A stretch of DNA of 64,000 nt from Lepidodermella squamata (taxonomy: Eukaryota; Animalia; Gastrotricha), in the NCBI GenBank assembly GCA_047495785.1, contig JBLDXI010000029.1, positions 2,294,001 through 2,358,000 on the forward strand, written 5' to 3'. The notes beneath the pieces are model-generated. The model had not been told where the DNA came from. It made no database searches and saw only the letters and a program-made list of their open reading frames with translations. Every line of letters starts with the position of its first letter. Position 1 is the stretch's first letter. Below are positions 1-53,222 of this stretch, in pieces. The position numbers and the translations under genes were made by a program.

Positions 1-1169
1 CTGCAATACCTGGTTGTAGCCGGGTTTCTGACCGAGAGTGAGACCAAGATCTTGGAAAATGCGACTGTGGCGAGGTACATGGTTCCGCTGGCTTGGTGCG
101 CGGCTCTGGTGAAGCGTGCCCGAATCAAGGAGAACCGAATTGATGAAGACATCGGCTACAACGCGATCGTAGAACAGATCGACAAAATTCGATCAAAATG
201 TGGAATGTGTGTGATTGAGATTTTTTTCTCGAATTTTAGCAATTTTTTATAGGCTCATCTACTACAATGCTAATCCTGTTCCACTAGCCTATATCCACGT
301 CGTTGTTTTGGCTGTGTATTCGTTTTTTACCACGGTTTGTCCATCTTAAAGAATCGAAATTTCAAGCATTTTTTTATTGAATTAGGCGGCAATGGCTGGT
401 AGCCACCGGTCTCAAACCGATGAAATTCACGATTCACTACTTCAAGGCGCATCTCTCGTTGAAATTCTATTGGTCAGGCTGTTGTCTGAGCTAATCACTC
501 TGTTGCAGTTCGCAATCTGCGCCGGGATGTTGGCCGCAACTGAATCGCTAATTTGCCCGTTCGGCAACAACGACGGCGATTTTGAAACCGACGAAATCGT
601 GAAGCGACACCTGAGCATCGCCTACCTCATCGTCGATGATATGCATTCGCTGATTCCGCAACTGTCTTCGTTGGACGACCCAAGCAGTGTTTCGAAGAGT
701 ACTGAAACTTTGGATGATAATCGCAGCCGAACTTTCATCACGATGAAGTCGGTTTCTGTTGCTAGCCGCGATCCTAGTCGTCAAGCTTCAGTCATGGTGA
801 GAACTCGTTTTTTTTATTTAATTTTTAAATTTTTTGATCTTTATTCAGCAAAATCATTCTCTCGATGACGAAGATGGCCTGGAATTGCTGTACCGTCTAT
901 CTGGAATTGAGAACCTGGGTCGCAATGGCCGAATTCGGCAGCGTTTCCTGAGGTGGTTGCGGCGGATTCCTCTCCTTCGATCCATTTTCTCATTCCGCGC
1001 CCCTCGGGACAGCTACAACCCGACTCCGGAACCGACATTTGTGCCGCTGAACCAACAGACCCAGCGACCATCAGTGCATTCGACCTCGTACCCTAACTCA
1101 AACACACCTCCCTCGTCGAACACTCCACCAACTTTGTTGCGATTGCTTAGTTTCCGTCGCATTAATTAA
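1..1169 (+). CDS. Bestrophin-family channel, copy 1 (5' end outside window)
   Basis: Spliced exons give LVVAGFLT, NPVPLAYIHVVVLAVYSFF and CPFGNNDGDFETDEIVKRH, which are bestrophin hallmarks. Ends LLSFRRIN*. Confidence 0.88.
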
Positions 1170-1448: not shown

Positions 1449-3175
1449 ATGACTATTGAGTACACTAATGCTACCCATACAGCCAGGGCTTATGGATTTC
1501 TGCGATTGCTATTCCTCTGGCGAGGGTCTGTTTACAAATTGATTGCATTTGAGCTGTTTCTATACGTCACGATCAACTTCGCAATACTTACAATATACAC
1601 ATTTGTGTTGAATGATGCGCAGAGGGAGATTTACAGTTTATTCAGCCTTAAAATCGCGAAACTACAGAGTTACCTCCTGACACCGGCTATTTTCTGCCTC
1701 GGCCTTTTCATGCAAATCTGTTACCGGCGCTTTTGGACCAATTTCCAGCAGATACCCTGGCCGAATGGCTTTGCGTTCTACGTTGCAAGCTATGTGGAAG
1801 GTCGCGACGAGAGGAGCAGGAGACTGAAGCGGACCCTTGTCAGATACGCAGTTGCATCCATCGTTTTGACCTTGACATGCGTATCGCGACGGATCTATGT
1901 TATCTTTCCCGAATTAGAGTTCATGGTAGCTGCAGGGTTCCTAACTGACGATGAAGCGGAGCTGCTGAAAGATGTGAAAACTTCGCACAGGTTAGTAACA
2001 TTAAGGAGGAATTCGTTAAAGATTTGCTCAAATTACAGGCATATGGTTGTACTATCCTGGTGTGCTTTGCTTCTGCGACATGCCCGGAAGAACTTGGGAC
2101 TGATCTCGGAAGACTATGGCTACAACGCCGTGATGGAAGAAGTCGATGCGATCCGGAACAAGTGTCGAAGGTAAATAACTTTCTAGAACCCACAGTCTAA
2201 CCTATAAGGATCTTCATAAGGTTGATCACCTTCGAGCTCGCGCCAATTCCGCTAGCTTACATCCACACCGTTGTGTTGGCCGTTTACAGCTTCTTCGGAG
2301 CTGCAGCGATTTCGTGCAGCCATCGCCAAGAGACAAAGTCTCTGCACAAAACTCTGGTTGAATCAGACCCCAGTGAACAATGGATTATCTTAATGTTCGG
2401 GGAGATAATAACCATCTTGCAATACGTGATCTGTACCGGCTTGTTGGCTGCTAGCGAGTTGCTGCTGTCGCCTTTCAGCGAGAATGAGAACGCGATTGAG
2501 ACAGATAGCATACTGAAAATTCATCTTCAAATCGGCTATCTGATGGTTGATGACTCGTTTCAATCTATGCCTGATCTAACTGGCTATAGTAGACCGCCTT
2601 CAGTAAATTTTTCGATTAGCAGCGATTCTTCTGAAGAGGAATCATCGGATGAAGATGAAGTTGCCGCCATGCCAAACAATCAACCAGCTGCGTCAGTGAT
2701 TCTGGCTTCTTTTAGACCAAGAGCGTTAACTTGGGTATAGCATTTTCTTTATTTCGTTACCGTTTGAATGTAGATGACATCAATATAGAGCATCAACGAA
2801 AGTGACGAAAGCGAAGAACAGCCCCAACAAACAGCGACAGAACAACTGATCAGGGCGAGGACATCTTCACAAGTAAGGAGAAGGTCTCTAAGCGCGAGTC
2901 GACGCAGTTCCACTACGAGCAGCGAGTCATGTTGGGAGCGTTTTATTAAGATGGTTCGGAAGTTATGCACCTTCAACCGGCAACCTGCCCAAGCGCAACA
3001 GATTCCAATGAAAACAAACTTCAAGCGGGCTTCTACGCCTCGAGGAAGCGACAGCAGTGGTCCTGTTATCAAGATTAATCATCGTCCGGATCACCTCACG
3101 GTTTCAGGTCGTCGGTATTTGAGAGCAAATAGAATGAGCTTGGACCGAATATTGACATTTAGGGAGATGAACTAA
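1449..3175 (+). CDS. Bestrophin-family channel, copy 2
   Basis: MTIEY..., LLFLWRGSVYK, IPWP, RTLVRY, PIPLAY, SPFSENENAIE. Exons approx. 1449-1990, 2039-2170, 2221-2734, 2789-3175. Confidence 0.92.
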
Positions 3176-3461
3176 CGCTGATTAAAAAATGCAATTCTTA
3201 CCGACACGTTGCTCCTTTTGTTTTGAGTTCTAATTTAAGCATTACGGTAAATGAAAGGAATATATGCTCGTGCTCAATATGGTTTACGTGTAGACCGAAA
3301 AAAACGCAACTCGTTAACCTGGAGCTTTTGATAGTTAAATTGCTACCTTTTGCCGATGAATTATTCTCACCTGGTGATAACCCTAAAAGCATGAGAGGCT
3401 CGGGTATAATTTGTTGACATTGACGGTTTCACACTTATGCAACATATTGTAGCAAGCTACA

Positions 3462-5139
3462 ATGGCTGTTAGCTACAACAAAGAGGTGCACACAGCCAGG
3501 CCATTCGGGTTCCTCCGTCTGCTGTATCGATGGCGCGGGTCTGTTTTCAAGCTGATAGTGTACGAGCTTTTCCTCTATGTCATCATTACCTTTGCCTTCC
3601 CTTTCATCTACATGTTCCTATTGGATGGAGAGCAGCAAGAAAACTTTAATTTGTTCGGGCAGTACCTTGCTAAGCTTCAAAGCTACATCTTGACGCCTGC
3701 AATCTTTTGCCTCGGTCTATTCATGCAAATTTGCTACCGGAGATACTGGAACAGCTTTCAAACTGTTCCTTGGCCTTCGGGCTTTGCGTTTTACGTTGCG
3801 AGCTACGTCGAGGGCACTAATAAGAGGAGTCGACAGATTCGCCGGACCCTTGTTCGCTACGCCGTGGCTTCTATCGTCCTTACGTTAACTTGTGTTTCGC
3901 GAAGGATGAGCATTATTTTCCCAGACTTGGACTACGTTGTAGCAGCTAAATTTCTGACTCGACAAGAGGCTGATCAGCTGGCCAACGTGAAACCTACTCA
4001 GAGGTTAGCTTAGCTGAAATTTACTGGGTACATGAAAGTAAAAACTCTATTCGCATAGGCACATGGTTGCACTGTCGTGGTGTGCTTTATTGCTCAAAAA
4101 CGCAAGAGAAAAATATGGCTTGATTGTCGAAGATCATGGCTACAATGCAGTTTTCGATCAACTCGATCAGATCAGAAATAAATGCCGAAGGTAACTTATA
4201 TTACCCGTGGACATAAACCACTTGAAATTAAGCATTTTTCCAATTCAGGCTGATCACGTTGGAATTAGCTCCGTTGCCTCTAGCTTATATCCAAACTGTC
4301 GTCCTAGCCGTTTATAGTTTCTTCATTACAGCTGCGTTAACGTGTAGCCATCGAAACGAAACATACTCCCTTCACAAAGAACTTGCAAAGGCTGATCTCA
4401 GGGAGCAGTTTTTGGTCCTAATCAGCGGCGAGCTTATAACCATTGGCCAATTTACTGTTTGCGTGGGAATGGTTGCGACCAGTCAAATGTTGCTTTCGCC
4501 ATTCGGAATGGATGACAGCGCGATTGAAACTGATAACATTTTGAAAATCCACCTTGAGATTTGCTACCTAATTGTGGATGGTATGTTCGATTCCATGCCC
4601 GATTACGCAGCTCAATCAGCTGCTCCAAGCCGGAGGCATTCGATGGCTCCGTCCTACGATGACGGAGAAGAGCCAGCATTGTTTCCTGATCATGGTGTTG
4701 GAATGGCTACATTCCGACCAAGAGCTCTGACTTGGGTAATTTGACATATCTATGACTTTTAATTTATAAGCAGGTGAAATTTTCGCAGACAATGGATGAG
4801 CTAAATGAAGATTTGGAGAGGACTGAACAACAAAGGCGTCAGTTCTCTAGGATGTCATCAGCTGGATCAACCCTTCAAGAATTGGATTTCGAGCCCTCAG
4901 AGGAGCTATCCAACTTTATGCAAAGAATGCGCCGTCGGCTTAGCTCCATGTCGAGCAACTCGAGAAGAGGATCGCTGACTAGCGTGGCACTAGAAGACTT
5001 TTCATCGCACGCTCTCAATCAACATCATCAACATACGATGCCGATCAAGAAACACGCGCATCTATCGATTCGGAAACATCGCATGAGCATTGATGGTATT
5101 AGGGCCTTCCGTGATTTGAATAAACGAGATCATCACTAG
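3462..5139 (+). CDS. Bestrophin-family channel, copy 3
   Basis: MAVSY..., RWRGSVFK, VPWP, PLPLAYIQTVVLAVYSFF, SPFGMDDSAIE. Same three intron positions as copy 2. Confidence 0.92.
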
Positions 5140-5365
5140 ATGAATTGTTCATACTTGATGACTTTTAAGCTTTTGACGCGCTTTATTTGTAGTTAATGTC
5201 ACTGCCTGCGGGCAGACTGTCGTCTCATGACTTGCATTGATGTCCTAGCAGCTTGTTTTGCTTCCTAGCCCGGGGTTATTTTTCCCCGCTGTCTTTAAAA
5301 TATATGGCAAAACGCTTCCTCATTCTAGCACAGATAAGAGCTATAACCACACCGGCTCCTCAAAA

Positions 5366-7037
5366 ATGGTTGTTGGATATAACAACGAGCTGAACTCGCT
5401 CGCGCCTTTCCGATTTTTAAGGGTTCTTTTTCGATGGCATGGGTCCGTATTCAAGCTTATCGCTTACGAGTTGTTCATATACGTCATAATCAATTTTGCC
5501 ATTCTTTTCATATACCTTTTGCTACCAGACGAGGAGCATCGAGAAAACTTCAATCTATTCGGTCAATATCTTGCCAGGCTATCTACTTATATTCTAACAC
5601 CGACAATTTTCTGCCTCGGCCTGTTCATGCAAATTTGTTACCGAAGATATTGGAACAGTTTTCAAGCAGTACCTTGGCCGACGGGTTTCGCATTCTTTGT
5701 GGCAAGTTATGTAGAAGGAGATGACGCTAGAAGTCGGAAACTACGAAGAACATTAGTTCGATACGCCGTAGCCTCTATCGTCCTAACGATGAAATGCGTA
5801 TCAAGAAGAATGAACGTCATGTTCCCAGATCTGGATTTTATTGTCGCAGCTAAATTTCTGACGCGCCAGGAAGCAGACATGCTACAGGACGTGAAAGCAA
5901 CTCAAAGGTTGGCAAAATCAAACTTATATATAGCACAAAACGAAAAATTTTCATCTGTAAAGGCATATGGTTGTATTAACTTGGTGCGGAATTTTGCTGA
6001 AGAAGGCTCGGCTGATGAACCTGATAGAAGAAGATTTCGGCTACAATGCGGTTTTTGAACAGATGGATGAAATTCGTAACAAATGTCGCAGGTGATTCTT
6101 CATGCAAAAACTCAGTGCATAATAACAATTTTTTCAAACCAGGCTCATTACTCTCGAATTGGCTCCCTTGCCGTTGGCCTATATCCACACAGTTGTTCTT
6201 GCAGTGTATAGCTTTTTTATCACAGCTGCTCTAACTTGCAGTCATCGGCAAGAGACCAACAACCTTCACAAAGACCTTGCTCTAGCAGAAATGAGTGAAC
6301 AATGGGTGGTCTTGATCGTCGGCGAACTCATTACTATTTCCCAATTCACGGTATGCGTTGGCATCGTAGCTGCCAGCCAAATGCTTCTCTCGCCGTTTGG
6401 ATCTAGCGATAGCGCAATTGAAATCGACAACATTTTGAAAATTCATCTCGAAATTTGTTATCTGATAGTTGATGGAATGACCGAGGCGATGCCAGATGTA
6501 TTAACCGACGAGAATAGATCTTCCGCTTACAACCTACACACAGAAACTAGAGATAAAGCTTTGTTTCCTCAACATGGCCAAGGAATGGCTATCTTTCGGC
6601 CGCGAGCCCTTGCTTGGGTATTGATTTTTAAAGCTAATTTGACATTTTATTATTTGTCTCATTAACAGTCAATCGACGAAGCGAATGAGGATGAAGAAAC
6701 TATCTTGGAGCTGGAAAGGGCTGCGATACTTTCGACAAAATTGTTCCGAATATCATCTGCAGGCTCTCAAATGGCTGAGCTTAATACCGAGCCTCAGGTC
6801 AAAAAGTCATTCTGTGCAAGAATTTGTCAAAGATTGAGTTCGATATGCCAACGCCGTCGAGACACAAGACCAGCTGAGACTCAAATAGCTGAGATTCCTT
6901 TGCAGCCAGTGAGCTCACTGCCCACTGATCAAAATATGCGACGGCGGCCTCCGCCGGTCCCAGTATTCAAGCACCGATCTATGCGCAAGAACCGAATAAG
7001 CATTGATGGGATAATTACATTTCGGGATCTGAACTAG
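5366..7037 (+). CDS. Bestrophin-family channel, copy 4
   Basis: ATG at 5366 (MVVGYN) aligns with paralog starts. RWHGSVFK, VPWP, PLPLAY, SPFGSSDSAIE. Ends ITFRDLN*. Confidence 0.92.
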
Positions 7038-7204
7038 AATCTCACGACTTGTGAACTTTAACGTCTGCACCAAACAATAAAGCACGATGACATCTGAATG
7101 CCGGGGCTATTAACACGCTTCAACCGTCAACAGGCAAACAGCCCGGGGCTAGCCCAATTTTGAAAACGAAATCTTTTATCATAAGCTAATTATTTATTTT
7201 GACA

Positions 7205-8785
7205 ATGACAGTTGATTACAATTCGCCATTTCACACAGCTAGATTCCTAGGCTTTCTCGGGTTGCTGTTCCGATGGAAAGGATCTGTCTTCAAAGTTATT
7301 GCTGCAGAAGTGTTCATATACACCCTGATTTACTCCACCATCTTATGCCTCTACATTTTCCTAATGACTGACGAGCAGAGGCAGCTGTACAATCTAGTCG
7401 GGGAGAAACTTGCCAGGGTATCTGGCTACGTTTTAGCGCCGGCTATTTTCTGCTTAGGATTCTTCATGCAAATTTGCCACAAACGATTTTGGACCAATTT
7501 TGAACTAATCCCATGGCCAAACGCGTTTGCGTTTTATGTATCCAGCTACATCGAAGGACATCATCCAAGAAGCGCTGAACTTAAGCGAACTCTAGTTCGA
7601 TATGCAGTCGCATCCATAGTACTGACTCTCAACTGTGTTTCGAAAAGAACCCACGACATCTTTCCAAATCTTAAATGCGTGGTTGCTGCGGGATTTCTTA
7701 CTGAGCAGGAGAGCAAGCTACTAAAATCTGCCAAGCCGTCTCATCGGTATCATGAAGGTGTCTTCTTTGATTTCTGATCTCAGTCTTTTGATTTGTAGGC
7801 ATATGGTTGTTTTGTCGTGGTGCAGTATTCTCTTGCATACCGCCCGCCACAAAGTCAGATTGATCGATGATGAACACGGTTACAACGCTGTTCAAGAGCA
7901 TCTTGACGATATCCGGAACAAATGTAGAAGGTTTTAGCTGATGGCTTATGATTACTTCAACTTGAAATTACCGACTATGTTTAGGTTGATCACTTTCGAA
8001 ATGTCCCCGCTTCCATTGGCCTACGTACAAACTGTCGTGTTGGCCGTTTACGCATTCTTCTGTATCGCCGCTGGCGCCGGAACCCATCGCATGGAAACGT
8101 CTGCTCTTTATAAGAAATTCTTAGACAACGCAGATATAACTGAGTTGTGGAATGTTGCTGTACTCGGTGAGGTAATAACCCTGCTGCAGTACGCGATTTG
8201 CACTGGGCTACTCGGCGCGAGTGAGCTCCTGCTTTCACCATTCAGCTACAGTGATAATGCTATTGAAATCGATTACATCTTAAAGCGCCATCTTCAGATT
8301 TGCTACTTCATTGTCGATGAAAAGTTCGATACGGCCCCAGAGATGGCAGATGCTGCGCTGTTTTACTCTTCGGCAGATGAAACCGATGTAAAAGTGCAGG
8401 ATGAAGAAGCCGCAGCTCCAATATCTTGGCGCCCTCGTGCTTCGACATGGGTTGGATTTCATAATAGTTTTATATCCTTTTAAATCTCTGTCTATTGCAG
8501 TCAAGATACCGTCGATCAATCGATCTTCGGTCCTCCTCGCCTGCTTTTGCCGCTTTAAGAGGCATGCTGAGATCTTATTCGAGCACAACTGGTCAGCCTG
8601 CTACAACCAACAATCGGTCATCATTGTTTCAACGTCTCCGACAGAGAATCGCTCGCCACTTACCGGGCCCATTTAGGCCACAGGAGCCGCAACCGACTCG
8701 ATCACGATCGAGGAATTCGCTGCACGGTTCCCATGGCAGTGTTGACAGAATCATCGTGTTTCGTGAACTCAACTTGACACATTAG
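7205..8785 (+). CDS. Bestrophin-family channel, copy 5
   Basis: MTVDY..., RWKGSVFK, IPWP, PLPLAYVQ, SPFSYSDNAIE. Four exons. Confidence 0.92.
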
Positions 8786-9096
8786 TAATAAAGTACGTAA
8801 AGAGCTTAGTAAACGCTATGGGACGGTGGAATAATTTAGCGAACACGAAAAAACAGTCATCGCGTCGCGCTGAAATTACTGTTTAGCTCTGGCCAGTGTA
8901 TCAATATTTTACTTCAATGGACCATTCGGACTTGTGCCGTGCACTGTGTTTGTTGTGAAAGAATAGGCCGTAAAACCGCTGACCTGGAACGAGTGAAGTC
9001 CCAACTTGTGCTTTGTCCCGCGGCTCGTGTTATAAACAATAACACCGTGCAAACACAGTTCCGCGTATTTAATCTTTTTCAGGATTAAGTAAGAAG

Positions 9097-12000
9097 ATGA
9101 CTGTCAGATACAGTGATGCTGTTGCTTCTGCGAAACCATTCCGGTTCTTTAAACTACTGCTACGATGGCGAGGCTCGTTCTACAAATTGATCGTCTACGA
9201 ATTCGCGATTTACTTCGCCATTTACATGTCCCTGAACATCATTCACTCCTTTCTGCTTAATGACGCTTATGAAAGATGGTTTTCGGAGTTTTGCACCCAG
9301 ATCGGCTTCATGTCGGGCTATGTCGTGGCCTCCGTCACTTTTTGCCTCGGCTTCTTCATCCAACAAGTCTATAAGCGATACTGCTATCAATTCTACATGG
9401 TCCCTTGGCCGGATGAATTCGCATTCTTAGTCTCCGTAAACGTCAGGGGACAGGATGTTCGAGGCAGACTCCTCAGGCGAACTATGGTAAGTTTCAATAG
9501 TAGGATTTGAATACCAACCTTAATACCCTTTATCAGGTGCGCTATGCAGTTGCATCAATAATTCTTACCTGGATGATTTTCTCGGAGCGAATGAAAGTTT
9601 TATTTCCAGACCTCGAGTCTCTCGTTGTTGCGGGGTTCCTAACGGAACACGAAATCAGCCTCCTCAAAACAGTTGAAAGGCCTCCATGGCGTCAAATGGT
9701 TGTCGTATCATGGTGTGCTGCAGTAGTAAAGCGGGCCAGAATGGAGAATCGAATCGAAGATGACTTCGCTTATGACGCCGTTTTTACAGCATTGGACAAG
9801 CTCCGAATGAGGGCGAGAAAGTGAGTCCTATTGCCTCCGAATCCTCATTAAATTCAAGGTGATTTTCATATAGGCTTATCCAGCAAAATAACAGGCCTGT
9901 TCAATTGGCCTACGTCCAAACTGTTATAATCGGAGTATTCTCGTTCTTTGTCATGGCAGCAATTGCTGGTAGCCACCGTCTTCAAACCCAGTCTCTTCAC
10001 AAGAAATTTTTAGATGAAAGCAGCCCTGGCGACATTTGGATTCTGCGACTGCTATCACAAGCCGTTACGCTGCTACAATTCGCGATCTGCGCCGGGGTTT
10101 TGGCGATAAGTCGATCACTGCTGATGCCTTTCGGTAAAGATGACTGCAGCATCAATGTAGAAGATATCGTTCGCCGGCACTTGTCGCTGTCTTATCTGAT
10201 TGTGGACGAGCTTCACTGGTACATACCGGAGATGGGTGATGGACTGATAGGCAGTGCAGCGGGTTCAATTTATCAGCGGTCAGATGCCGGCTCTCCAGAC
10301 CCAGCGCATTGGCATCCAACGCTCGAGGTAAACGGAAGCCTTAAAAATCATAAATGTCTTAAAAATGTCTCCGATTTGGGCTCCTTTTATGTTATATCCT
10401 TACATTCTTATATAATCTGGGCTGCAGAAAAAACAATTAATCACTCGATATATTGAAAAATGTTTTGCAGTTTTTCCCTCAGGCTCCTGGTTGGGGTTTT
10501 GCTTCAGACTTTTTATCTATAGAAAGTCTTCTCCCAGAAATTCTGAAAATCAAAGAATAGATTTGGCGAATCAATTAGTCCCAATTAGGTTCCGCTTCCT
10601 GCCAAACTAGCTTCGAAAATTTTGAAAATGGAACTGAGATATTGTTGAAATTTGGCTACGCTAAAAGTTATTCTGTGTTCATTTTAGATTTTTTGAATTT
10701 AAATACAGCGTGTCCCATGAGTTGGGAAACTCTTTCCTAAGTTCTGGCATGAAATTCATATTCTTTCTGTAACTGAGCCTGGTGGGAGCATCCTTCACCT
10801 TTTATCTGCGATATACCTACCGGAAATTGTCTAATTTACCGGAGAATACCCGGTAAACCCGATGGTAAAATTGGTTTGGTAATTTCGGTATTTCACCCGT
10901 GGTGACCCGATTCCTCCGTATTATTTTTGTCCCACTGTAAACGCGTCATACCTAATTAGAGGACCCCGCCCTAATTTCGGCCACTTTTCAGGTTTTCCTA
11001 CTTTGCCAGCCAGTTGAATTTTTAGAAAATATTCGGCAAAAGCAAAATTAAAGACGAGTTCTTAGGCTATCGAATGCCGCTTTCCGCAAGTCCGTACGAT
11101 TTTACCTTGATTTATGGCTAATTTTTTAGTCACCCAGACACCCGGCCGGAATTATGAAGCGGGGTGCCCTAATTTCGGCCACCTCATCCAGGTACACTAA
11201 TACCATAAGTTTGGTATCGTTAGATTCGTCTCAAAAAGCTGACTATAAAAACCGCTTTTGTTGCTTCACCTGTGAGCTTATCCTTGACGACGTGATGCCT
11301 GAAACTCAAACTTGTTTTGACAGGTACAAGTTTGATAGCTTGTTTTCAACTGCGGTTGACTTTCTAAAATTCTGGAAAAATATCTAAAAAATCCCTTGCC
11401 TCCTGTAGAATGAGAGTATCGATTTTGTTTCCCCGAATTCAATTCCACTATTGACTGCTAATTTTTGGAATCGAACCCTCGAAAACACTAAAATTGCCCA
11501 TCTAGATCTCTTCACCTCGGCGGTTTTAGATAGAATTTTTTATACCAAAATGAAGCTGGCGTTTAGCTGGTAATTATTGAGGTGAAAGCAGTAAATTGTA
11601 AAGATCCAGTTTCAGCTAAATTATACCTGCAAAGTAGCGGTAACAGAGCACTCGAGAAGCGACATAAGCCCGCTCGCTCGCATTTAGAATTATTTTTTGC
11701 GATCACGTGCTTGAAAAATCATGAAACAGATGGGCTCAACAATGCAAATTTCTTGAATTGCATGCAAATAAAACTGCTGCACAGCACTTCGTGCCCAAAT
11801 TTCGGCCGGCGGCCGAAGTTAGGACGCAGCGGCCGAATTTAGGAAGTGGCCGGAATTAGGGCGGGGTCCTCTATTTTTCTCATGGCATTTTGGAATTTTT
11901 CTGACCATGTGGGATGATACATCGTGTCCCAAAATTCGCGCAACTATTTTTTTATTTGGCAAATTTTTTTAGGAAATTAAACTAATTGTTTCAAATTAAA

Positions 12001-12687
12001 CCTACCGAAAGATTATTCCTTTTTATCAGCGATTTAACCGAAGAAATTACAAATTTACCGGAGAAAACCTGAAAAATCCCGGTTATTCGGTAATTTTCGG
12101 TATTTTACCCGGTTGGACCATGTTTCTCCGGAATTTTTTAACGACTTTAGCAAGTGACTTTCTGGATTACCATTCTCGTTGATTTTTCTTAAATTCTTCT
12201 GACCATGAAATAAGACTTCGCATCTCATTTTAGAGTTTCCAAACCCTTTTCCGTTCATTTTATATGCTTTCTAACTTACTTATGGATTTCTTATTTACTT
12301 ATGGGACACGCTGTATTTTAGAATTTACGATCCCTCGTCGCTTGCATTTCCTTCATCCTCGACCTTTCGCGTAAAAATCCCGGTGTTGACTTTTCGGTTT
12401 TTAAAATAATTTTTCTTAATTTGAAGCTGAAAAAAATATTTTTTCTCATTATTTTCAATTAGGTACCCTCTCGGATGAGCCTTAGTCAGTACGATCACCA
12501 AGAATTTGGCCGGCCGGGCTACATTCTATCTGTCGCCCCGAAGAAAGGCGACGCGCCTAGCACATCAGCCGCCGAAGCGCAGGTCAAATTCACGCATGGC
12601 CGCAAACAATCGAAAGTCCTGCGGCTGCTAAGTTTCCGCAAACTCAACAGACAAACGCTTCATAAGGAAGATTTCCCGCATTTGTGA
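9097..12687 (+). CDS. Bestrophin-family channel, copy 6
   Basis: MTVRYS..., RWRGSFYK, VPWPD, MPFGKDDCSIN. Last exon (~12463-12687, LLSFRKLN) lies beyond a 2.1-kb transposon-filled intron. Confidence 0.9.
10706..12313. mobile_element. Non-autonomous TIR DNA transposon (Tc1/mariner-like) in the last intron of bestrophin 6
   Basis: TA|CAGCGTGTCCCATGAGT ... ACTTATGGGACACGCTG|TA: near-perfect terminal inverted repeats with TA duplication. No transposase ORF. Related internal sequence at ~19890-19990 and ~27720-27840. Confidence 0.8.
10959..11871. mobile_element. Second TIR element nested inside the first
   Basis: TA|GAGGACCCCGCCCTAATTTCGGCCACTT ... AAGTGGCCGGAATTAGGGCGGGGTCCTC|TA: ~28-bp inverted repeats with TA duplication. 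Confidence 0.82.
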
Positions 12688-14216
12688 CATTTTTGTCATT
12701 ATAAATAACCCGAGGCATTCAATAAAACATGGTCATCGTTTTATATAATCGATTTTGAGCGGGTTTATTTGACTGGCGAAGACGTCTATAACACGCGTCG
12801 TTTTATCTCTTATAACGAATGCTAAAAGCCACGCCAAGCTAAGTAAACAAAAGTGCGGTCTACAACAACCGAAAACAACAAACGTCTATAGTGATATATA
12901 TCACGGCCAGATAGCAATAAATGTATAATGCTGTGTTTTTGGCCCATGCTCGTTTCTTTTATACCTGTGCCAGTGGCCGAAAGCTATGAATGGTACAGCT
13001 GTGCGAATGAGCCTTCGTGGTAATATTACTGCTTTTCGTAGTAGTGGGCCGTGTGTAATAATCGGAGTGCTTCACTATGCTGACGTATAAAAAGAGTTGT
13101 GGCTACGTGATATCAGTTGTAATAAAAATGGCCGATATGGACTAACGACCTATTTCTTCATGATTTCGCACTTCCTTATAGCAATTTCTTGCCGCACTGT
13201 TCGTGCATAAATTATTCAATAGCCGGTGGTGATTTTTTTTTTGAAAATTCTGCTGACTTTTTCTTTTACATTGTACGGCAATTTGTTTTAGGAGTCAGCA
13301 TTTTTATGCATTTTCTCTACACACATAAATTCGCACGTGCCAGTTGATTTATACGCGATAGCAAAAAAACTCACAGCAATCTGAGAGCAGAGGAAAATGG
13401 CAAAACAAAATCTTCTCGAGTTTTCCCTTCTTTATTTTTCAGGTTTTAACGTTAAATTTATCGTAGAAGTAACTCGTTTATATTATTTGACTTTTTCGGC
13501 TGGCGATTAATTACGCAGCCATACATTGCCTTTAATTACTTACAGGATTAATTGTTTACTAGAAAATCGATTGAGTCATCTATAACTGGCCTTAATATAG
13601 ATTCTTTCTTTCAATTACGAATATTAGGAATTTCGGCTGGATTTCCTCAATTACCTTTAATTAACCTCTACGATGAAAGGCTAAATCTTTTGTCGCTAAA
13701 TTAGAATGTTACAGCTAGGTACCCATTTGAATTTTAAAAAATTATTCAAAAATCACAGCTTCAATAAAATTTGTCGATTTTGTTCGCTCGATTTTGAAAT
13801 GAGAACATCAAAAATCCTTGATCTGCACTCCTGGTCTCTAGAATTTTACTGCTTTTTGCAAGCGGTGCAAGCGGAAAAATTTCACGGAGAATAAATTCGT
13901 CACGTGAAAGACTCAAAAAGTTGTTAGTTCAATTAGGTAACAGTTCGCTGTAATTTTTTTTAACACACGGTTATAACAGACCGGGCTTTTTTAATCTGCC
14001 TAAACTTTCTCATTGTTTCTAAACCTCAGCTCGAGCGTAGAAAATTATCTTTATTTTACACATAAATTATCCCGACTCGACTGACGAAACTTTTTGCCTT
14101 TTAACCTGGAATTTTTTTTATCGGTTTCCAGTTACTAAATTGAAGCTTAATTTTTCCGCATCGATTTTGCCTGTATTTTCCATAATTTTCAATAGATAAA
14201 TGTGAATCCTTAAAAA

Positions 14217-15804
14217 ATGACAGTTTCGTACAGCGAGGATGTGGCTTATGCCACGCCATTCAGATTCGTTCGACTGCTATTTCGCTGGCATGGTTCGGTT
14301 TACAAGCTCATCGTCTACGAATTCAGTATTTATTTCGCTGTTTACATGGTAAATAAATATTTAAAAATTATCACCGGCTGATTTTTCGGGAATTTTTCTT
14401 AATTAGATGATGAATATCGTGCATTCTTTCATCCTGACCCCGGAACAAGAAGAGCTGTTCTCCAACGTCTGCGCTCAGTTGGGTCGAATGTCCGGCTACG
14501 TTGTTGCTTCTCTAGTCTTTTGCCTCGGTTTCTTCATCCAACAAGTTTGGCGGCGATTTTGCTTTCATTTCAACGTTGTCCCATGGCCGGATGGCTTCGC
14601 TTTCCTCGTATCAGTCAACGTCCGAGGCCACGATATGCACGGCAGACTGCTGAGACGGACAATGGCAAGTAAATTTGACAAATTAAATGATTTATTTTAT
14701 TTTAAGGTAATTCTAGGTCCGATATGCTGTTGCTTCAATCATTCTTACCTGGATGAACTTCTCAGAACGGATGAAGGTTCTCTTTCCGAATCTGGATGCC
14801 CTAGTCATGGCTGGATTTCTAACCGAAAACGAGGCTCAAATGCTGACAACTGTTGCGAGACCTCCTTGGAGGTTAGTTTCATTCCCAAAAGTTCGGTGGA
14901 TTTTTTTCAATTTCCGGAATTTAGGCAAATGGTGGCAGCATCCTGGTGTGCCGCAGTAGTGAAGCGAGCCAGAATGGAAAATCGAATCGAAGATGATTTT
15001 GCTTACAACGCAATCATCCGAGAATTAGACACCATACGTATGAGGTGTCGCCGGTAGGTCCTCACCTAATTATCCGCGCTTCTCTGTTAACAATTTGATC
15101 TTTACAGCTTGATTTCTCAGAACAATCGACCTACTCCACTAGCTCATCTTCACATTGTCATTATCGGCGTGTATTCGTTCTTCTCGATCGCGGCTGTTGC
15201 GGGTAGTCACCGCCTTCAAACTCAGAATATCCATCTAGAACTGATTGGCGATGAAGCCGGCGATATCTGGATGCTTCGCCTGTTGTCCCAAGTCATCACC
15301 ATGCTTCAGTTTTCGATTTGCGCCGGAGTTCTGGCGATTAGTCGCGCGCTAATCATGCCGTTTGGGAAGGACGATTGCAATATTGATGTCGAAGAGATTG
15401 TCAAGCGGCACTTGTCTGTTGCTTATCTGATCGTTGACGAGTTGCATTCGCTGATTCCGGAACTTGAGGACGCTCCCGATGCTGATATTGACAACTCCGA
15501 TATTGCTGACGAACCCTTCGAAATGCCTTTCATCAGGGTTTTTATTTGTCGAATGACAATTTTCTTTATACTCATGAATTCGATTTTTCAGAGACGTCTG
15601 AGCCGACGCCATAGCAAGATGTCAAACGAAGGCAGGCAGCACGAGAAGTTGGGCTTTCTCTTGTCGGTTGCTCCGAAGAAGGATAAGGGTTCAACATCGG
15701 AATCGAGCAGCCAGCCGGATGTTACTGCGGCTCGGGATCGTTTCCTAAAAGAACGAAGTGAATCGAAACTTGAACGACTGATGGACTTCCGAAAACTGAA
15801 CTAA
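14217..15804 (+). CDS. Bestrophin-family channel, copy 7
   Basis: MTVSYSED..., RWHGSVYK, VPWPD, MPFGKDDCNID. Ends MDFRKLN*. Closest to copy 6. Includes a GC-AG intron (14665-14716). Confidence 0.9.
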
Positions 15805-15916
15805 TCCTAATCATGCGCAGAACCTATTTTGATACTATTTAGCTGAGCTGAATAAAAGAATACCCATATCAGGAAGGGCTTATGATTTATTTACACGATA
15901 GGACAAGAAATAAGGT

Positions 15917-17821
15917 TTAGCGATTTGGCTCAGGTAACTTTTTCGCACTCTTGTACCATGCGTCGAACTGCCAGTCGGACATCATGAAATTGCGTCTGAT
16001 ATTCCTGGAGTTGTACTTGCTTATAAAAACAGCTTTTGCTGTCTTCACGATCCGTTCTGAAGACGGCCATATCGGCGAATTGATGTAGCTGTAATAGTCA
16101 TCCTCGTCGCCTTTGTCATCCTCGAACTGATCCTCCTCAGCATCAGGCAGATTAATTAGGCCAACTTTGAAGCCTGGAATGCAGTGGGCGATAAAGCTAG
16201 CCACTCTCACCACGTAAACCTGCTCGACCATAAGAAAAATTTCGACTCGCTTACGGCAGCGCCAAGTGTTCTCCGTCATCGTTGCTTTAAGACCGACTTC
16301 AATGCTAGCTGGGACGTCGTAATCTTTGGTAGCTATTGCCACAGAGTCCAGCTTTATTTCAACATCGCCCGAGTCACCCTCGACGTCGGCATCCACATCA
16401 TGAATTTGAACAGATTTTTCCTTCTTTACGGAATTCCAGCCATACTGGCCGGCATAAGTGCACGCGATTTTGACCTTGAGAATAGGACTGCCTTGATAGA
16501 TAAACACCCGTTCCGGATTGATGAGATGAGGTCGATCTGTCTCGTAAGATTGACAACTTGTGAAATAATATCTGCTCGCATCGAAGTAGGAAAACGACCT
16601 GATAACTACACCTGAAGCTTGAGATTTACACCGAAAAACAGTGAAAGGGAAATCTGAATCCTCATCCACGACAATCAGTGCTGGCTTCGGATAGCTGATC
16701 TCCCGCAACTGCACTGTCTTCGGTAAGGTTGACGCGCTTTTGTAGGTATTGCTTTTCTCGTCCAACCACTCCCAGTCGACCCGCCCCGAGCCAATGAAGT
16801 CATGAAGCAGATACGGGCACATCAGGCGCATGGGTGAATGCTTGATTTTCACACTACTAACTTGCATTCGACTCCACTCGAGCACAGGTATCAATTCGTG
16901 GTTTCCAAACATAATACCTGGCTCTCCGCAATCCCACCAGCGATCGCTGTCAAGAGGCAAGCATTGGTAGGAGTCATCGACCAGACGCACCCTGCATATT
17001 CTCGGTGCGCGCAACGCGCATGTGCTATGCGCATCGCAGTTTTTAAATAATCGCGTTGCCATGCATAATTTTAATGCACTATAATCATCATAACGGTCAA
17101 AAATTTTAACCGAAGTCTCGTAGCTTCCCGAAATAATAGCTGCCTCAAGTTTCTTGTCTGTATCACCTGCCGGCTTCACTCCGACTTCGAAGCTGTCCAG
17201 TATAAGCTGATCGCTACCTTTGAACGTAGCCTTCACTCCAGTTTGATAACGTTGTTTATAAAACCCAAAATATCGCTGCCAATCATATGTAGGGTCAAAC
17301 ATTGAAGAATTCCAAACCAAAATGATTTTTTCGCCCTGAGATTTTCGCGCTATTTGATCGATGAAAAGAACTGAGAACGCCCGAGCATCTGTTAGAGGTG
17401 GATTTCTTCCATATACAAAAGGATGCCATTTTCCGAAAAAATCCGGAGATTCTGGCCGGATTACGTCAGTGAGAACCTCCCCTTCAGAATTATCTGTCAA
17501 TTTGAAAGAACGTATTGAAAGCTCAATATCGATAGGGGCACGGTCGAAATCATCAGTATCCTTATATGGATAGTGCAAATAGTTCAAACGGATTTTCACG
17601 ATGTAATCGAATTTTCCAGGTGGGTGCGCGATGATAAGCGCCGCGATGCCGTTACCGCCTCGATACAAGGAAACTTTTTTAGGCTCTTCCTGGCTATTTA
17701 CAACCCATGATTGTTCACCGTTGTGTGGCTTCTGATATGCTTTCATCCAATCGATGTCGTTGCTACAGCAGAAACCGGCTAAAAGAGAAGCAACCGCCAG
17801 GAGAAGCAAAAATCGCGCCAT
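15917..17821 (-). CDS. Intronless secreted protein of unknown function (634 aa) with a Cys-rich module and a probable Ig-like domain
   Basis: Long uninterrupted ORF with signal peptide MARFLLLLAVASLLAGFCCS. LMCP...VDWEW...ALIV...FRC spacing resembles an Ig fold. AATAAA downstream on the - strand (~15886-15891). Confidence 0.8.
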   Translation of the reverse strand: MARFLLLLAVASLLAGFCCSNDIDWMKAYQKPHNGEQSWVVNSQEEPKKVSLYRGGNGIAALIIAHPPGKFDYIVKIRLNYLHYPYKDTDDFDRAPIDIELSIRSFKLTDNSEGEVLTDVIRPESPDFFGKWHPFVYGRNPPLTDARAFSVLFIDQIARKSQGEKIILVWNSSMFDPTYDWQRYFGFYKQRYQTGVKATFKGSDQLILDSFEVGVKPAGDTDKKLEAAIISGSYETSVKIFDRYDDYSALKLCMATRLFKNCDAHSTCALRAPRICRVRLVDDSYQCLPLDSDRWWDCGEPGIMFGNHELIPVLEWSRMQVSSVKIKHSPMRLMCPYLLHDFIGSGRVDWEWLDEKSNTYKSASTLPKTVQLREISYPKPALIVVDEDSDFPFTVFRCKSQASGVVIRSFSYFDASRYYFTSCQSYETDRPHLINPERVFIYQGSPILKVKIACTYAGQYGWNSVKKEKSVQIHDVDADVEGDSGDVEIKLDSVAIATKDYDVPASIEVGLKATMTENTWRCRKRVEIFLMVEQVYVVRVASFIAHCIPGFKVGLINLPDAEEDQFEDDKGDEDDYYSYINSPIWPSSERIVKTAKAVFISKYNSRNIRRNFMMSDWQFDAWYKSAKKLPEPNR

Positions 17822-18107
17822 TTTCGAAGGATGAAATTTGTAAAAAACATTCTGCTTTTAATCATTTTCATTAAGGTGGGCTTTTTACAAATCTGCGTTT
17901 TGCTGCTTTGTGTATTTTGATTTTCCTCATTTATTTTCGTCTTTCGAGCCGAGCCTTTATGCTGTGAACTAGGCCATGGCCAGCACGCGCCAAATTATTA
18001 GTAGCCATGTTAGCGCGCGTGCCCTTTTTTATTACTACAATGCACTGCTAAAACAGCCGAGCTCGCACTTTTGGTTTGCACTTGTGCCTGCTTTCACTTT
18101 TAATCTT

Positions 18108-20397
18108 ATGACGGTTAATTACAGCGGTGAAGTCGCAACAGCACGGCCATTCGGTTTCGTTCGCCTGCTCTTCAGATGGCGCGGCTCATTTTACAAGCTC
18201 ATCCTCCTTCAATTCGCGTTTTACTTCATCGTCTACAACACCCTGAATTTGGTTTACATCTTCGCCCTGGATGACACCCAACGCGATACTTACGATAAAG
18301 TTGGCAAGCAGTTTGGCCGACTTTCAGGCTACATTGTCGGCCCGGTGATTTTCTGCCTCGGCTTCTTCATCCAACAAGTCTATAAACGATTTTGCGACCA
18401 TTTCTACGACGTTCCATGGCCTGATGCCTTAGCATTCCTGATTTCAGGTAAAAAATTCAGCCGTTATAATTGAAGGCGAAAATTATCAATTTTTATTAGC
18501 GAATGTGCGAGGTCATGACGCGAAAAGTCGACAACTTCGTCGAACAATGATCCGTTACGCCGTGGCGTCGATCGTCCTAGCGTTGATGAGTGTTTCCGAG
18601 CGAATGCAAGCCATTTTCCCGACCCTCGATCTCGTCGTTATCGCTGGCTTTCTTCGCGAAGAAGAAGCCCTAATTTTGAAGGATATCAAGCCAACCTCGC
18701 GGCACATGATCGTCCTCAGCTGGTGTGCGGTTCTATTCCGGAAGGCTCGGTTGAATAAACAAATTCAGGACGAATTCGGCTATAACGCGATTGTTGACGA
18801 GCTGGATAACATTCGATTTAAATGTCGAAGGTACCATGAATTTTTTATAATTTTTCTAAAATAATTTTTCAAATTTTAGACTGCTTTTTTACGACTGGGT
18901 GTCGATTCCTTTGTCCTACATTCAAACTCTACTACTCGGCTTGAGTAGTTTCTTCATGGCAGCTGCTGTTTCTAGCATATATCGCTTAGAAGCTCAAGTC
19001 GTGAAATTTACTTCAGATCCGAAAATTGAATTGGAAGACCAGCACGCGAGCCACGATCACAATCAATGGCCTGTTCGGTTGCTAGCTGAAGCAATCACCC
19101 TGCTGCAATTCACGATCTGCGCCGGAATGTCAGCGGCCAGTCAAAGCCTCATCCGGCCGTTCTCGACAAATGACGGCAATATCGATGTGGATCAAATTGT
19201 TAAACGCCACCTGTTTATTGCGTATATCATCGTCGATGATTTGCATAACATACTGCCGGAGTTGAATGACAGCCAGAGCGAGTCGTTTCGAAGAACTGCG
19301 AATGACATGTCAATCGATGATTTGGTCGGCGTTGGTGGCATCGAATTTGCAGCTTATCAACAAGCGAGGGGGTCGATTTTTTCTCACAGGGTAAGGAAAA
19401 AATTGTTTCACGAAAACCCTAGTTTTCTTGATTTTTATTAATTTTAAATCTTATTAGAAAAATTGTGCCAAATTTCCAAAATTTGAGGATTGTGACATTT
19501 TTAAGATCTTAGAAGCTGCCGGCATTCGATTCAACCAAAATATGACGTTTCAAGTTACTAGTTCTCCCTATCAATTTTTTCTATCGATTTCTACGCGAAT
19601 TTTGCGAATAGCCGATAGCCAATCGCCGATATCGATTTTAATTATCGATTTTGAAAATCAGCGATTTTTTCCAATAGCAGCAGTCCTGAAAGCCATATCA
19701 CACCTTTTTCATACACCTGAGGTAATAAAAAATCCCAGGGTGTCCCAAAATGTGTTCATAACTGTTTCGAATTTCGCGGTATTTTGTTACTAATTATACC
19801 AATTTATCAAATTTCTTACAAATTAAACCTAAAATAAACACCCCGTATCGGGTTCATAAGCCGAAAAATTCGAAATATACCTTCAAGAAATCCCGGAAAA
19901 ACGCGATGGTAACTGATTCGGGATTTTTCGGTTTTTTCGGTATTTTACCCGTTTTGACCAAATTTCTCCGGGATTATTTATCCCCATTGAAAATTTTCCT
20001 ATTTGATTATCATTCTAATGCGTTTTTCTCGTTACGGACATTTTCCTTGCCACGAAAAGGAAAAATTTAGATCCTCCTAACTATATTTTTCTAAATAATC
20101 TAAGCTTATTTAAATATTTTTCTTGTTTTACAGCCTAGTCGAGATCTTGCCGACCTTCGCGAAAAAGGCATTTTATTTCAAATTGGGGCGCAAGACGATC
20201 AAGATGCTTGGCGATGGATACGAAACATTCCTCTAATCAAGTCTATCATTCCCGAAAGACGGCGAAGTTCAGTCTCATCTTCGACTTCTAGTATCAGTGA
20301 ACTCCCTGATTCAATGTCTTCCCGGCGGCCTAGAACTTACACTGTTGAAAGTAAATCAGCTCTGCATAAAGTTCTCAGCTTCAGACGGCTCAACTAA
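18108..20397 (+). CDS. Bestrophin-family channel, copy 8
   Basis: MTVNYSGEVATARPFG, RWRGSFYK, YDWVSIPLSYIQ (canonical YDW), RPFSTNDGNID. Last exon ~20134-20397 (not in ORF track) ends VLSFRRLN*. Confidence 0.9.
19628..19725. repeat. Dispersed intronic repeat family (core GATATCGATTT..TATCGATTTT.GAAATCAGTGATTTTT)
   Basis: Similar copies at ~27560, ~38788 and ~55008; inverted copies at ~23410-23490 and ~37255. Confidence 0.65.
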
Positions 20398-53064: not shown

Positions 53065-53222
53065 CATTATAACGGTGCTCTACTTACATGACACTGAAAA
53101 CTACCGCTGCTTCCTTGTTGCATATTTATGATGATATATCACCTGCCATTTGCTTGCTATTATACCTACCAAAGAGCTATTTTTCTTCAATTCCGTTGAT
53201 GTTTTATAGGTTTTATTTGAAC

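What the first reader, a model, noticed from the sequence alone, without database searches (positions are those of the whole stretch)
1670..18375. Neck gate remodelled in every bestrophin copy with a visible N-terminus
Seen: aligned to human IPISFVLGFY (neck I76/F80/F84), copies 2-4 have T/F/L, copies 5-7 have A/F/F (6 and 7 also replace P77 with S), and copy 8 has G/F/F. Known: the I/F/F neck is the Ca2+-controlled gate, and mutating all three to alanine opens BEST1 without Ca2+. Inference: neck and clasp changed together, giving a wider or constitutively conductive pore, perhaps for larger anions.
Basis: partly seen in the sequence, partly recalled or inferred. Interest (0 to 1): 0.7.

Follow-up and report, generated by a model that had tools for sequence, protein, structure and literature searches.

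The report
Divergent bestrophin channels, altered gate
A small invertebrate carries eight neighbouring, expressed copies of a bestrophin anion channel in which the outermost of the three gate residues is small, while the two phenylalanine gate rings remain; this trait was inherited once from an old ancestor, so it marks a new subfamily and does not prove an open pore.

Summary
All eight tandem bestrophin genes have a small residue where BEST1 has I76. Copy 1, whose N-terminus lies just upstream of the window, has G. Copies 2-4 have T, copies 5-7 have A, and copy 8 has G. P77 is S in copies 1, 6 and 7. F80 is invariant. Position 84 is F in five copies and L in copies 2-4.

Among 228 other bestrophins, 97% have I/V/L/M/F at position 76.

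The change is not eight separate remodellings. The array, one unlinked paralogue and a five-gene array on a metagenome contig form one clade, and all 16 members have a small residue at 76. The copies are old (synonymous sites are saturated), constrained (pN is far below pS) and intact. At least copies 3 and 4 are spliced in an RNA-like run.

The same clade has also lost W287, F282/F283 and one or both Ca2+ ligands (D301, D304). It usually has F/Y/H at the aperture (position 205).

Two bulky gate rings persist and the aperture is bulkier. Two independent bestrophins with a small residue at 76 keep W287 and the clasp.

The scan also noted this array's clasp loss (s1-384368).

Verdict: a new variant of a known kind, of moderate interest.

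The parts
1..1169 (+). Copy 1 (c1), 3' part. The N-terminal exon with the neck (G76/S77/F80/N83/F84) lies upstream of the window at L008:1501-1893. In the window: aperture segment 94-198 (I205), gate/clasp segment 494-592, C-terminal motif 1143-1166.
1449..3175 (+). Copy 2 (c2). Neck codons 76-84 at 1680-1706 (T/P/F/G/L). GT..AG introns at 1991-2038 and 2171-2220. Aperture segment 2058-2162 (Y205). Gate/clasp segment 2408-2506 (L287, N301, A304).
3462..5139 (+). Copy 3 (c3). Neck at 3693-3719 (T/P/F/G/L). Spliced joints are seen in RNA-like contigs: reads join 4001 to 4057, 4188 to 4247 and 4734 to 4788. Aperture segment 4078-4182 (H205). Gate/clasp segment 4436-4534.
5366..7037 (+). Copy 4 (c4). 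Neck at 5597-5623 (T/P/F/G/L). A spliced joint (6088 to 6140) is seen in run X1. Aperture segment 5982-6083 (F205). Gate/clasp segment 6330-6428.
7205..8785 (+). Copy 5 (c5). Neck at 7436-7462 (A/P/F/G/F). Aperture segment 7818-7922 (H205). Gate/clasp segment 8175-8273.
9097..12687 (+). Copy 6 (c6). Neck at 9328-9354 (A/S/F/G/F). Aperture segment 9711-9812 (F205). Gate/clasp segment 10064-10162. The last exon (12475-12687) was assigned by its likeness to the c7 tail, which implies an intron of about 2 kb.
14217..15804 (+). Copy 7 (c7). Neck at 14506-14532 (A/S/F/G/F). Introns at 14349-14406 (GT..AG) and 14665-14716 (GC..AG). Aperture segment 14944-15045 (F205). H at position 236. Gate/clasp segment 15295-15393.
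18108..20397 (+). Copy 8 (c8). Neck at 18339-18365 (G/P/F/G/F). Aperture segment 18721-18822 (F205, N208, D212 by alignment to BEST2). Gate/clasp segment 19094-19192. C-terminal motif 20371-20394.

Best explanation
Shown: the window holds an old, intact, transcribed tandem array of eight genes from a bestrophin subfamily with no named members. In the common ancestor of this subfamily the outermost neck residue (I76) became small, and it has since moved among S/G/A/T by single-base steps. The F80 ring and a bulky residue at 84 (F or L) were kept. The aromatic residues that pack behind the neck and couple it to the Ca2+ clasp (F276, F282, F283, Y284, W287) became aliphatic or small (Y284 became Cys). 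The Ca2+-ligating side chains D301/D304 were mostly lost. The cytosolic aperture residue 205 became aromatic or His in seven of the eight copies.

Inferred: these are still pentameric anion channels with a hydrophobic gate, but the gate is shortened to two rings and no longer driven by the canonical Ca2+ clasp. Opening is therefore probably Ca2+-independent, either leaky or controlled by another input. One candidate input is the Ser/Arg-rich tail with its conserved terminal motif. The aromatic 205 ring is likely to be the tightest constriction and the main determinant of which anions pass.
For: - Family and fold. Pfam Bestrophin matches with E 1e-12 to 1e-47 on every N-terminal exon piece. The AF2 model of the intronless relative P0002 has pLDDT 79 and matches BEST1/BEST2 structures with TM up to 0.86. 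One continuous helix (72-116) carries A94, F98 and F102, which correspond to positions 76, 80 and 84.
- Neck residues.
- Rarity: 222 of 228 other bestrophins are bulky at position 76. The nematode representatives have the canonical neck.
- Single origin. One clade (support 96/88) contains the array, the C12 paralogue and the metagenome array L030. Sub-clades are shared between the two organisms with support 98/98 and 99/96.
- Constraint: pN 0.15-0.46 against pS 0.60-0.97 in all pairs, and the exon pieces tested have no stops.
- Transcription: GT..AG joints for c3 and c4 occur in run X1 only and not in the DNA-like run X2.
- Gating residues and clasp.
- Aperture.
- Literature. The triple-Ala neck mutant is Ca2+-independent with unchanged selectivity, and V205A alters selectivity (PMC6591409, PMC8496536). 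W287F is constitutively active, and P77 is described as perfectly conserved (PMC6342527). D301 and D304 ligate Ca2+ directly (PMC8496536).
Against: - There is no functional or pore-geometry data. The tools give no coordinates, no pentamer model and no HOLE or MD analysis.
- D302 is kept in seven of eight copies and backbone carbonyls also bind Ca2+, so residual Ca2+ sensing cannot be excluded.
- In open BEST1, I76 packs into a hydrophobic pocket (PMC6342527). Losing it could destabilise the open state instead of the closed one, so the direction of the effect is uncertain.
- The fold was predicted on a relative (62% identical to c6 in the N-terminal exon), not on a window protein.
- Transcription is shown only for c3 and c4 (faint contigs for c2), and X1 is only guessed to be RNA.
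Confidence: 0.55

Rival explanations
1. One reading: the neck and clasp changes give a wider or constitutively conductive pore suited to larger anions.
For: - Position 76 is small in all copies.
- W287 is replaced and D301/D304 are mostly lost.
- W287F and the triple-Ala neck mutant are Ca2+-independent (PMC6342527, PMC6591409).
- The human P77S variant showed increased halide entry in iPSC-RPE cells (PMC9266689), and c1, c6 and c7 carry S77.
Against: - F80 is invariant and position 84 is F or L, so only one of three rings is reduced.
- The triple-Ala neck mutant keeps normal selectivity, and selectivity tracks residue 205 (PMC6591409, PMC8496536).
- Residue 205 here is F/Y/H in seven of eight copies, which is not smaller than in BEST1.
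- P0030 and P0140 have a small residue at 76 together with an intact W287 and clasp.
Confidence: 0.2
2. The channels are still ordinary Ca2+-activated Cl- channels. The change at position 76 is a near-neutral or fine-tuning substitution, and Ca2+ is bound by the remaining acidic residues and backbone carbonyls.
For: - D302 is kept in seven of eight copies, and D301 in c3, c6 and c7.
- Three of the five protein Ca2+ ligands in BEST1 are carbonyl oxygens (PMC8496536).
- Independent lineages tolerate S or A at position 76 with a canonical clasp.
Against: - Both side-chain ligands are present together in none of the eight copies.
- The coupling residue W287 and its aromatic neighbours are replaced in all eight.
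- The R of the RFP motif is also lost (PMC2292144).
Confidence: 0.2
3. The copies are not autonomous channels. They act as regulatory or heteromeric subunits that mix with each other or with the canonical paralogue to give asymmetric necks.
For: Eight co-located paralogues carry four different neck types, alongside one canonical gene on C13. At least two of the copies (c3 and c4) occur spliced in the same run.
Against: There is no evidence for heteromers. All core helices and the pore-lining F80 are conserved, as expected for self-sufficient subunits.
Confidence: 0.1
4. The copies are decaying duplicates under relaxed selection, and the neck changes are damage.
For: The human I76T and P77S variants are disease alleles (PMC9266689).
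Against: - The frames are intact and the splice sites are consensus GT..AG, apart from one GC..AG intron in c7.
- pN is far below a saturated pS.
- The same neck types occur in orthologous sub-clades of another organism.
- Spliced transcripts are seen.
Confidence: 0.02

Closest known systems
Vertebrate BEST1/BEST2 Ca2+-activated Cl- channels (solved structures 4RDQ, 6N23-6N28, 8D1E-8D1O)
   Same: They share the Pfam Bestrophin domain and the same fold (TM up to 0.86 for the relative P0002). The neck helix has F80, G83 and F/L84 in register, and Y236, F247, L279 and the PF motif at 297-298 are kept.
   Different: - I76 is replaced by G/A/T.
- P77 is S in three copies.
- W287, F282 and F283 are aliphatic or small.
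- The D301/D304 ligands are mostly absent.
- The R of the RFP motif is lost.
- Residue 205 is aromatic or His instead of V/I.
- The tail is short and Ser/Arg-rich, with its own terminal motif.
Engineered BEST1 gating mutants: I76A/F80A/F84A (5T5N) and W287F (6N24/6N25)
   Same: The natural sequences combine a reduced residue at position 76 with loss of W287. In the laboratory, these are the two kinds of change that uncouple the neck from Ca2+ (PMC6591409, PMC6342527).
   Different: Only one of the three neck rings is reduced here. W287 becomes L/M/I/V, not F. Many neighbouring residues changed as well, so the mutant phenotypes cannot simply be transferred.
Human BEST1 disease alleles I76T and P77S
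   Same: The identical substitutions are the native state in c2-c4 (T76) and in c1, c6 and c7 (S77) (allele list in PMC9266689).
   Different: In humans they arise in an otherwise canonical background and are pathogenic. Here they sit in a co-adapted background and are under purifying selection.
Klebsiella KpBest (4WD7) and other Bestrophin_2 proteins
   Same: They share the overall fold (Foldseek TM 0.7-0.8), a three-ring hydrophobic neck (I62/I66/F70 per PMC9253114) and no conserved eukaryote-type clasp sequence.
   Different: Identity is only 12-14%. The array proteins score far below the Bestrophin_2 cut-off (about 20 bits against 27) and are clearly animal-type bestrophins.

Membership tests
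Bestrophin (Pfam PF01062, animal type) | Significant match to the family profile | tested here: met
   Every N-terminal exon piece scores 47-162 bits against a cut-off of 24.2. Genome-wide exon matches are listed.
Bestrophin (Pfam PF01062, animal type) | Bestrophin protomer fold | tested here: met
   The AF2 model of the intronless subfamily member P0002 (pLDDT 79) matches BEST1/BEST2 chains at E 1e-17 with TMt 0.76-0.86.
Bestrophin (Pfam PF01062, animal type) | Invariant RFP motif (R150-F151-P152) | tested here: not met
   F-P is kept, but R150 is I/M/L in the copies read (I-F-P in c2; for the others). The motif is described as invariant in PMC2292144.
Canonical Ca2+-activated bestrophin channel (BEST1-4 type) | Hydrophobic neck I76/F80/F84 | tested here: not met
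   Position 76 is G/T/T/T/A/A/A/G. F80 is kept in 8 of 8 copies. Position 84 is F in five copies and L in three.
Canonical Ca2+-activated bestrophin channel (BEST1-4 type) | P77 at the N-terminal end of the neck helix ('perfectly conserved', PMC6342527) | tested here: inconclusive
   P is present in c2, c3, c4, c5 and c8. S is present in c1, c6 and c7.
Canonical Ca2+-activated bestrophin channel (BEST1-4 type) | Ca2+ clasp with the side-chain ligands D301 and D304 | tested here: not met
   D304 is present only in c1. D301 is present only in c3, c6 and c7. No copy has both. The ligand assignment comes from PMC8496536.
Canonical Ca2+-activated bestrophin channel (BEST1-4 type) | W287 and F282/F283 coupling the clasp to the neck | tested here: not met
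   Position 287 is M, L, M, I, L, V, V, M in c1-c8. Position 283 is I or V. Position 282 is A, V, T or S.
Canonical Ca2+-activated bestrophin channel (BEST1-4 type) | Homopentamer that conducts anions when Ca2+ binds | not testable with these tools
   This needs expression and electrophysiology, or a pentamer model with coordinates.

The most novel reading that the evidence does not exclude
A whole animal bestrophin subfamily has given up Ca2+-clasp gating. The membrane neck is reduced to a two-ring hydrophobic gate that is permanently or easily open. Control and selectivity have moved to an aromatic or His ring at the cytosolic aperture and to a new C-terminal regulatory tail. That would make it a naturally occurring 'W287F-like' bestrophin with a different input signal.
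Probability: 0.25. Interest if true: 0.6.

Novelty: new variant of a known kind. Interest (0 to 1): 0.4.

Why it matters
Structural work on bestrophins treats I76/F80/F84, P77, W287 and the acidic clasp as essentially invariant, and many human eye-disease alleles map to these residues. This subfamily is a natural experiment under purifying selection. I76T and P77S are the wild-type state here, and the aromatic coupling network and the Ca2+ ligands are replaced.

Expressing these proteins would test three questions directly:
- Which of the three neck rings is needed for a hydrophobic gate?
- Can a bestrophin be gated without the clasp?
- Can an aromatic aperture take over gating?

The value is comparative and mechanistic. 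Nothing here shows a new kind of channel.

Tried and rejected
1. The first large protein search used the 209-aa exon 1 and found nothing. The tool's length window excludes full-length bestrophins, so the blank says nothing.
2. Numeric dN/dS could not be computed. Synonymous sites are saturated (pS 0.6-0.97), so only the contrast between pN and pS is reported.
3. Identifying the organism failed. The assembly has no COX1 and no hit to the nematode SL1 or SmY models, though those controls also found nothing and so are uninformative. Run and organism names are coded. Earlier notes call it only a small invertebrate.
4. Misalignment was considered and rejected. Pairwise HMMER, MAFFT and the profile alignment agree, P77/F80/G83 anchor the register, and the two extra residues lie N-terminal to the motif.
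5. Pseudogenes were considered and rejected.
6. Residue-level superposition, pentamer modelling and pore-radius analysis were not possible, because the structure tools return no coordinates.
7. I found no paper with data on an I76-only substitution. PMC5555266 simulates only the wild type and the triple-Ala mutant.
All searches were done exon by exon by reference, and the full-length fold used the intronless relative P0002.
Full report
**What is there**

The window is G000:C29:2294001-2358000 of a 121-Mb assembly in 151 contigs. Positions 1 to 20397 of the + strand hold eight tandem bestrophin genes with introns of about 50 nt.

- Every N-terminal exon piece matches Pfam Bestrophin (E 1e-12 to 1e-47).
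- Exon-level hits along C29 run from 2293486 to 2313240 and nowhere further on that contig. The array therefore has eight members.
- The first exon of copy 1 lies about 500 bases upstream of the window (L008:1501-1893).
- I read the splice sites directly for c2 (introns 1991-2038 and 2171-2220), c1, c6 and c7. One c7 intron, 14665-14716, is GC..AG.
Every search was made exon by exon by reference.

**Checking the observation**

HMMER aligns c2 exon 1 to solved BEST1 chains over residues 1-178 at E 1e-34. It places T-P-A-I-F-C-L-G-L opposite I76-P77-I-S-F80-V-L-G83-F84. MAFFT with the genome's own canonical paralogue gives the same register, as does a profile alignment with 150 representatives. 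That register is anchored by P77, F80, L82 and G83. The two extra residues of the array proteins lie N-terminal to the motif.

Residues 76/77/80/83/84 are as follows:

| Copy | 76/77/80/83/84 |
|---|---|
| c1 | G/S/F/N/F |
| c2-c4 | T/P/F/G/L |
| c5 | A/P/F/G/F |
| c6, c7 | A/S/F/G/F |
| c8 | G/P/F/G/F |

**Is it unusual?**

I examined 228 other bestrophins retrieved by two very large searches. Their conservation at the key positions is:

| Position | Residue(s) | Count of 228 |
|---|---|---|
| 76 | I/V/L/M/F | 222 |
| 77 | P | 224 |
| 80 | F | 227 |
| 84 | F | 224 |

The nematode representatives in that set have the canonical I-P...F...G-F. The genome's own canonical gene on C13 has I/P/F/G/F, the full acidic clasp sequence and W287. 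The array is therefore a real outlier.

**One event, not eight**

A maximum-likelihood tree of the N-terminal region places three groups in one clade with support 96/88:
- the array;
- an unlinked paralogue on C12 (S76/A77);
- five tandem genes on an 11.8-kb ENA metagenome contig, L030 (T/P, G/P, A/P, G/S and A/S at 76/77).

All 16 members of this clade have a small residue at 76. Sub-clades are shared between the two organisms: c6 groups with two L030 genes (98/98), and c2-c5 group with two others (99/96). Several duplications therefore predate the split of the two organisms.

Other evidence bears on age, constraint and expression:
- All paralogue pairs have saturated synonymous sites (pS 0.60-0.97), while pN is 0.15-0.46. 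The exon pieces tested have no stops.
- In run X1, which is guessed to be RNA, contigs skip GT..AG introns of c3 (three joints) and c4 (one joint). The DNA-like run X2 shows none of these joints.
- A profile search of 5.8 billion proteins found only unnamed ENA/Logan members of the subfamily (278-654 bits; the full-length ones 496-654). Outside the subfamily, the best hit is an ordinary arthropod bestrophin at 322 bits. That search scored only the 8000 candidates sharing most words.

**What else changed**

I aligned the later exons to solved structures and to each other. The results are:
- W287 is M, L, M, I, L, V, V, M in c1-c8.
- F283 is I or V, and F282 is A, V, T or S.
- In c2, F276 and F278 are Ile. 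Y284 is Cys in all eight copies.
- D304 survives only in c1. D301 survives only in c3, c6 and c7. D302 is kept in seven copies.
- The R of the RFP motif is I/M/L.
- Aperture residue 205 is I, Y, H, F, H, F, F, F in c1-c8. In c8, position 208 is N and 212 is D.
- Y236 is kept in all copies except c7, which has H.

**Structure**

I made an AF2 model of the intronless relative P0002 (A/S/F/F; 62% identical to c6 in the first exon). It has pLDDT 79. One unbroken helix spans residues 72-116 and carries A94, F98 and F102 (positions 76, 80 and 84) at i, i+4, i+8. Foldseek matches BEST1/BEST2 chains in all states at E about 1e-17 with TMt up to 0.86.

The matches do not distinguish open from closed states.

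**Reading the mechanism against the literature**

- The neck is the Ca2+-dependent gate. The I76A/F80A/F84A mutant abolishes Ca2+ dependence without changing selectivity, while V205A abolishes the lyotropic selectivity sequence (PMC6591409, PMC8496536).
- In closed hBest1 the radii at I76, F80 and F84 are 0.8, 0.7 and 1.6 A (PMC9253114).
- W287F alone makes chicken BEST1 about 80% Ca2+-independent and locks the neck open. P77 is called perfectly conserved and marks where the helix unwinds on opening. In the open state I76 packs against F247, F276, L279 and F283 (PMC6342527).
- D301 and D304 are the only side chains that ligate Ca2+ (PMC8496536).
- I76T and P77S are human BVMD alleles. P77S increased halide entry in iPSC-RPE cells (PMC9266689).

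Taken together, loss of W287 and of both ligands makes canonical Ca2+ gating unlikely.

The other parts are weaker:
- The F80 ring is untouched and position 84 stays bulky, so a two-ring hydrophobic barrier probably remains.
- The neck is not the selectivity determinant.
- The aperture is bulkier, not smaller.
- The direction of the effect at position 76 is uncertain, because I76 also stabilises the open state.
- Two independent bestrophins with a small residue at 76 (P0030 from an isopod, S76; P0140, A76) keep W287, D301 and D304. A third, P0149 (T76), has lost W287 but keeps both Asp. Neck and clasp changes are therefore not generally coupled, and their co-occurrence here is a single phylogenetic event.

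**Verdict**

The best-supported reading is an old, constrained, expressed bestrophin subfamily with no named members. Its gate is shortened to two rings and uncoupled from the Ca2+ clasp, and an aromatic aperture probably sets the narrowest point. I put confidence at about 0.55 for the whole statement. The descriptive part is much more secure than that, and the mechanistic part much less.

It is a new variant of a known kind. Its value is as a natural test of bestrophin gating models. Electrophysiology with and without Ca2+, a permeability series and a pentamer structure would decide the question.

The source organism was not identified.

Noticed in passing
window 1143-1166, 3149-3172, 5098-5121, 7011-7034, 8750-8773, 12625-12648, 15778-15801, 20371-20394; L030:5316-6044: All eight copies, and one gene of the metagenome array, carry a conserved C-terminal motif, [ILMV]xx[FY]R[KRDE][LMI]N. 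It is the very last residues in c1, c2, c4, c7 and c8, and is followed by 3-12 residues in c3, c5 and c6. Its function is unknown; it may be a regulatory or sorting signal.
   Followed up: partly
window 2711-2734, 4712-4735, 6594-6617, 8427-8450: Copies 2-5 end their third coding exon with F/W-R-P-R-A-x-x-W. From memory only, this resembles the F-R-R-x-S-F stretch of the BEST1 C-terminal inactivation peptide. I did not test it.
   Followed up: no
window 14665-14716: Copy 7 has a GC..AG intron (donor GCAAGT) where copy 6 has GTAAGT. The reading frame is kept.
   Followed up: partly
window 10319-12474: The last exon of copy 6 appears to lie about 2 kb downstream of the preceding exon, whereas other introns are about 50 nt. 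I did not examine what the large intron contains.
   Followed up: no
window 15917-17821 (- strand): An intronless 634-aa ORF with a signal-peptide-like start sits between copies 7 and 8 on the opposite strand. It has no Pfam match.
   Followed up: no
L002 (G000:C12:329759-333535) and L022/L024/L027 (G000:C74): There are further atypical bestrophins elsewhere in the genome. The C12 gene is S76/A77/F/G/F with M287 and F205. The C74 copies are far more divergent, with a neck that reads roughly V/A/F/A/L and FPD in place of WPD. Only the C13 gene is canonical.
   Followed up: partly
L030 1-7678: The related five-gene array on an ENA metagenome contig has almost no introns: four genes are single ORFs and one has a gap of about 40 nt. 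A VWD/Sushi gene follows it. The source organism is unknown.
   Followed up: partly
window 52012-54206: Two tandem, apparently intronless D-isomer 2-hydroxyacid dehydrogenase ORFs of 350 and 372 aa.
   Followed up: no
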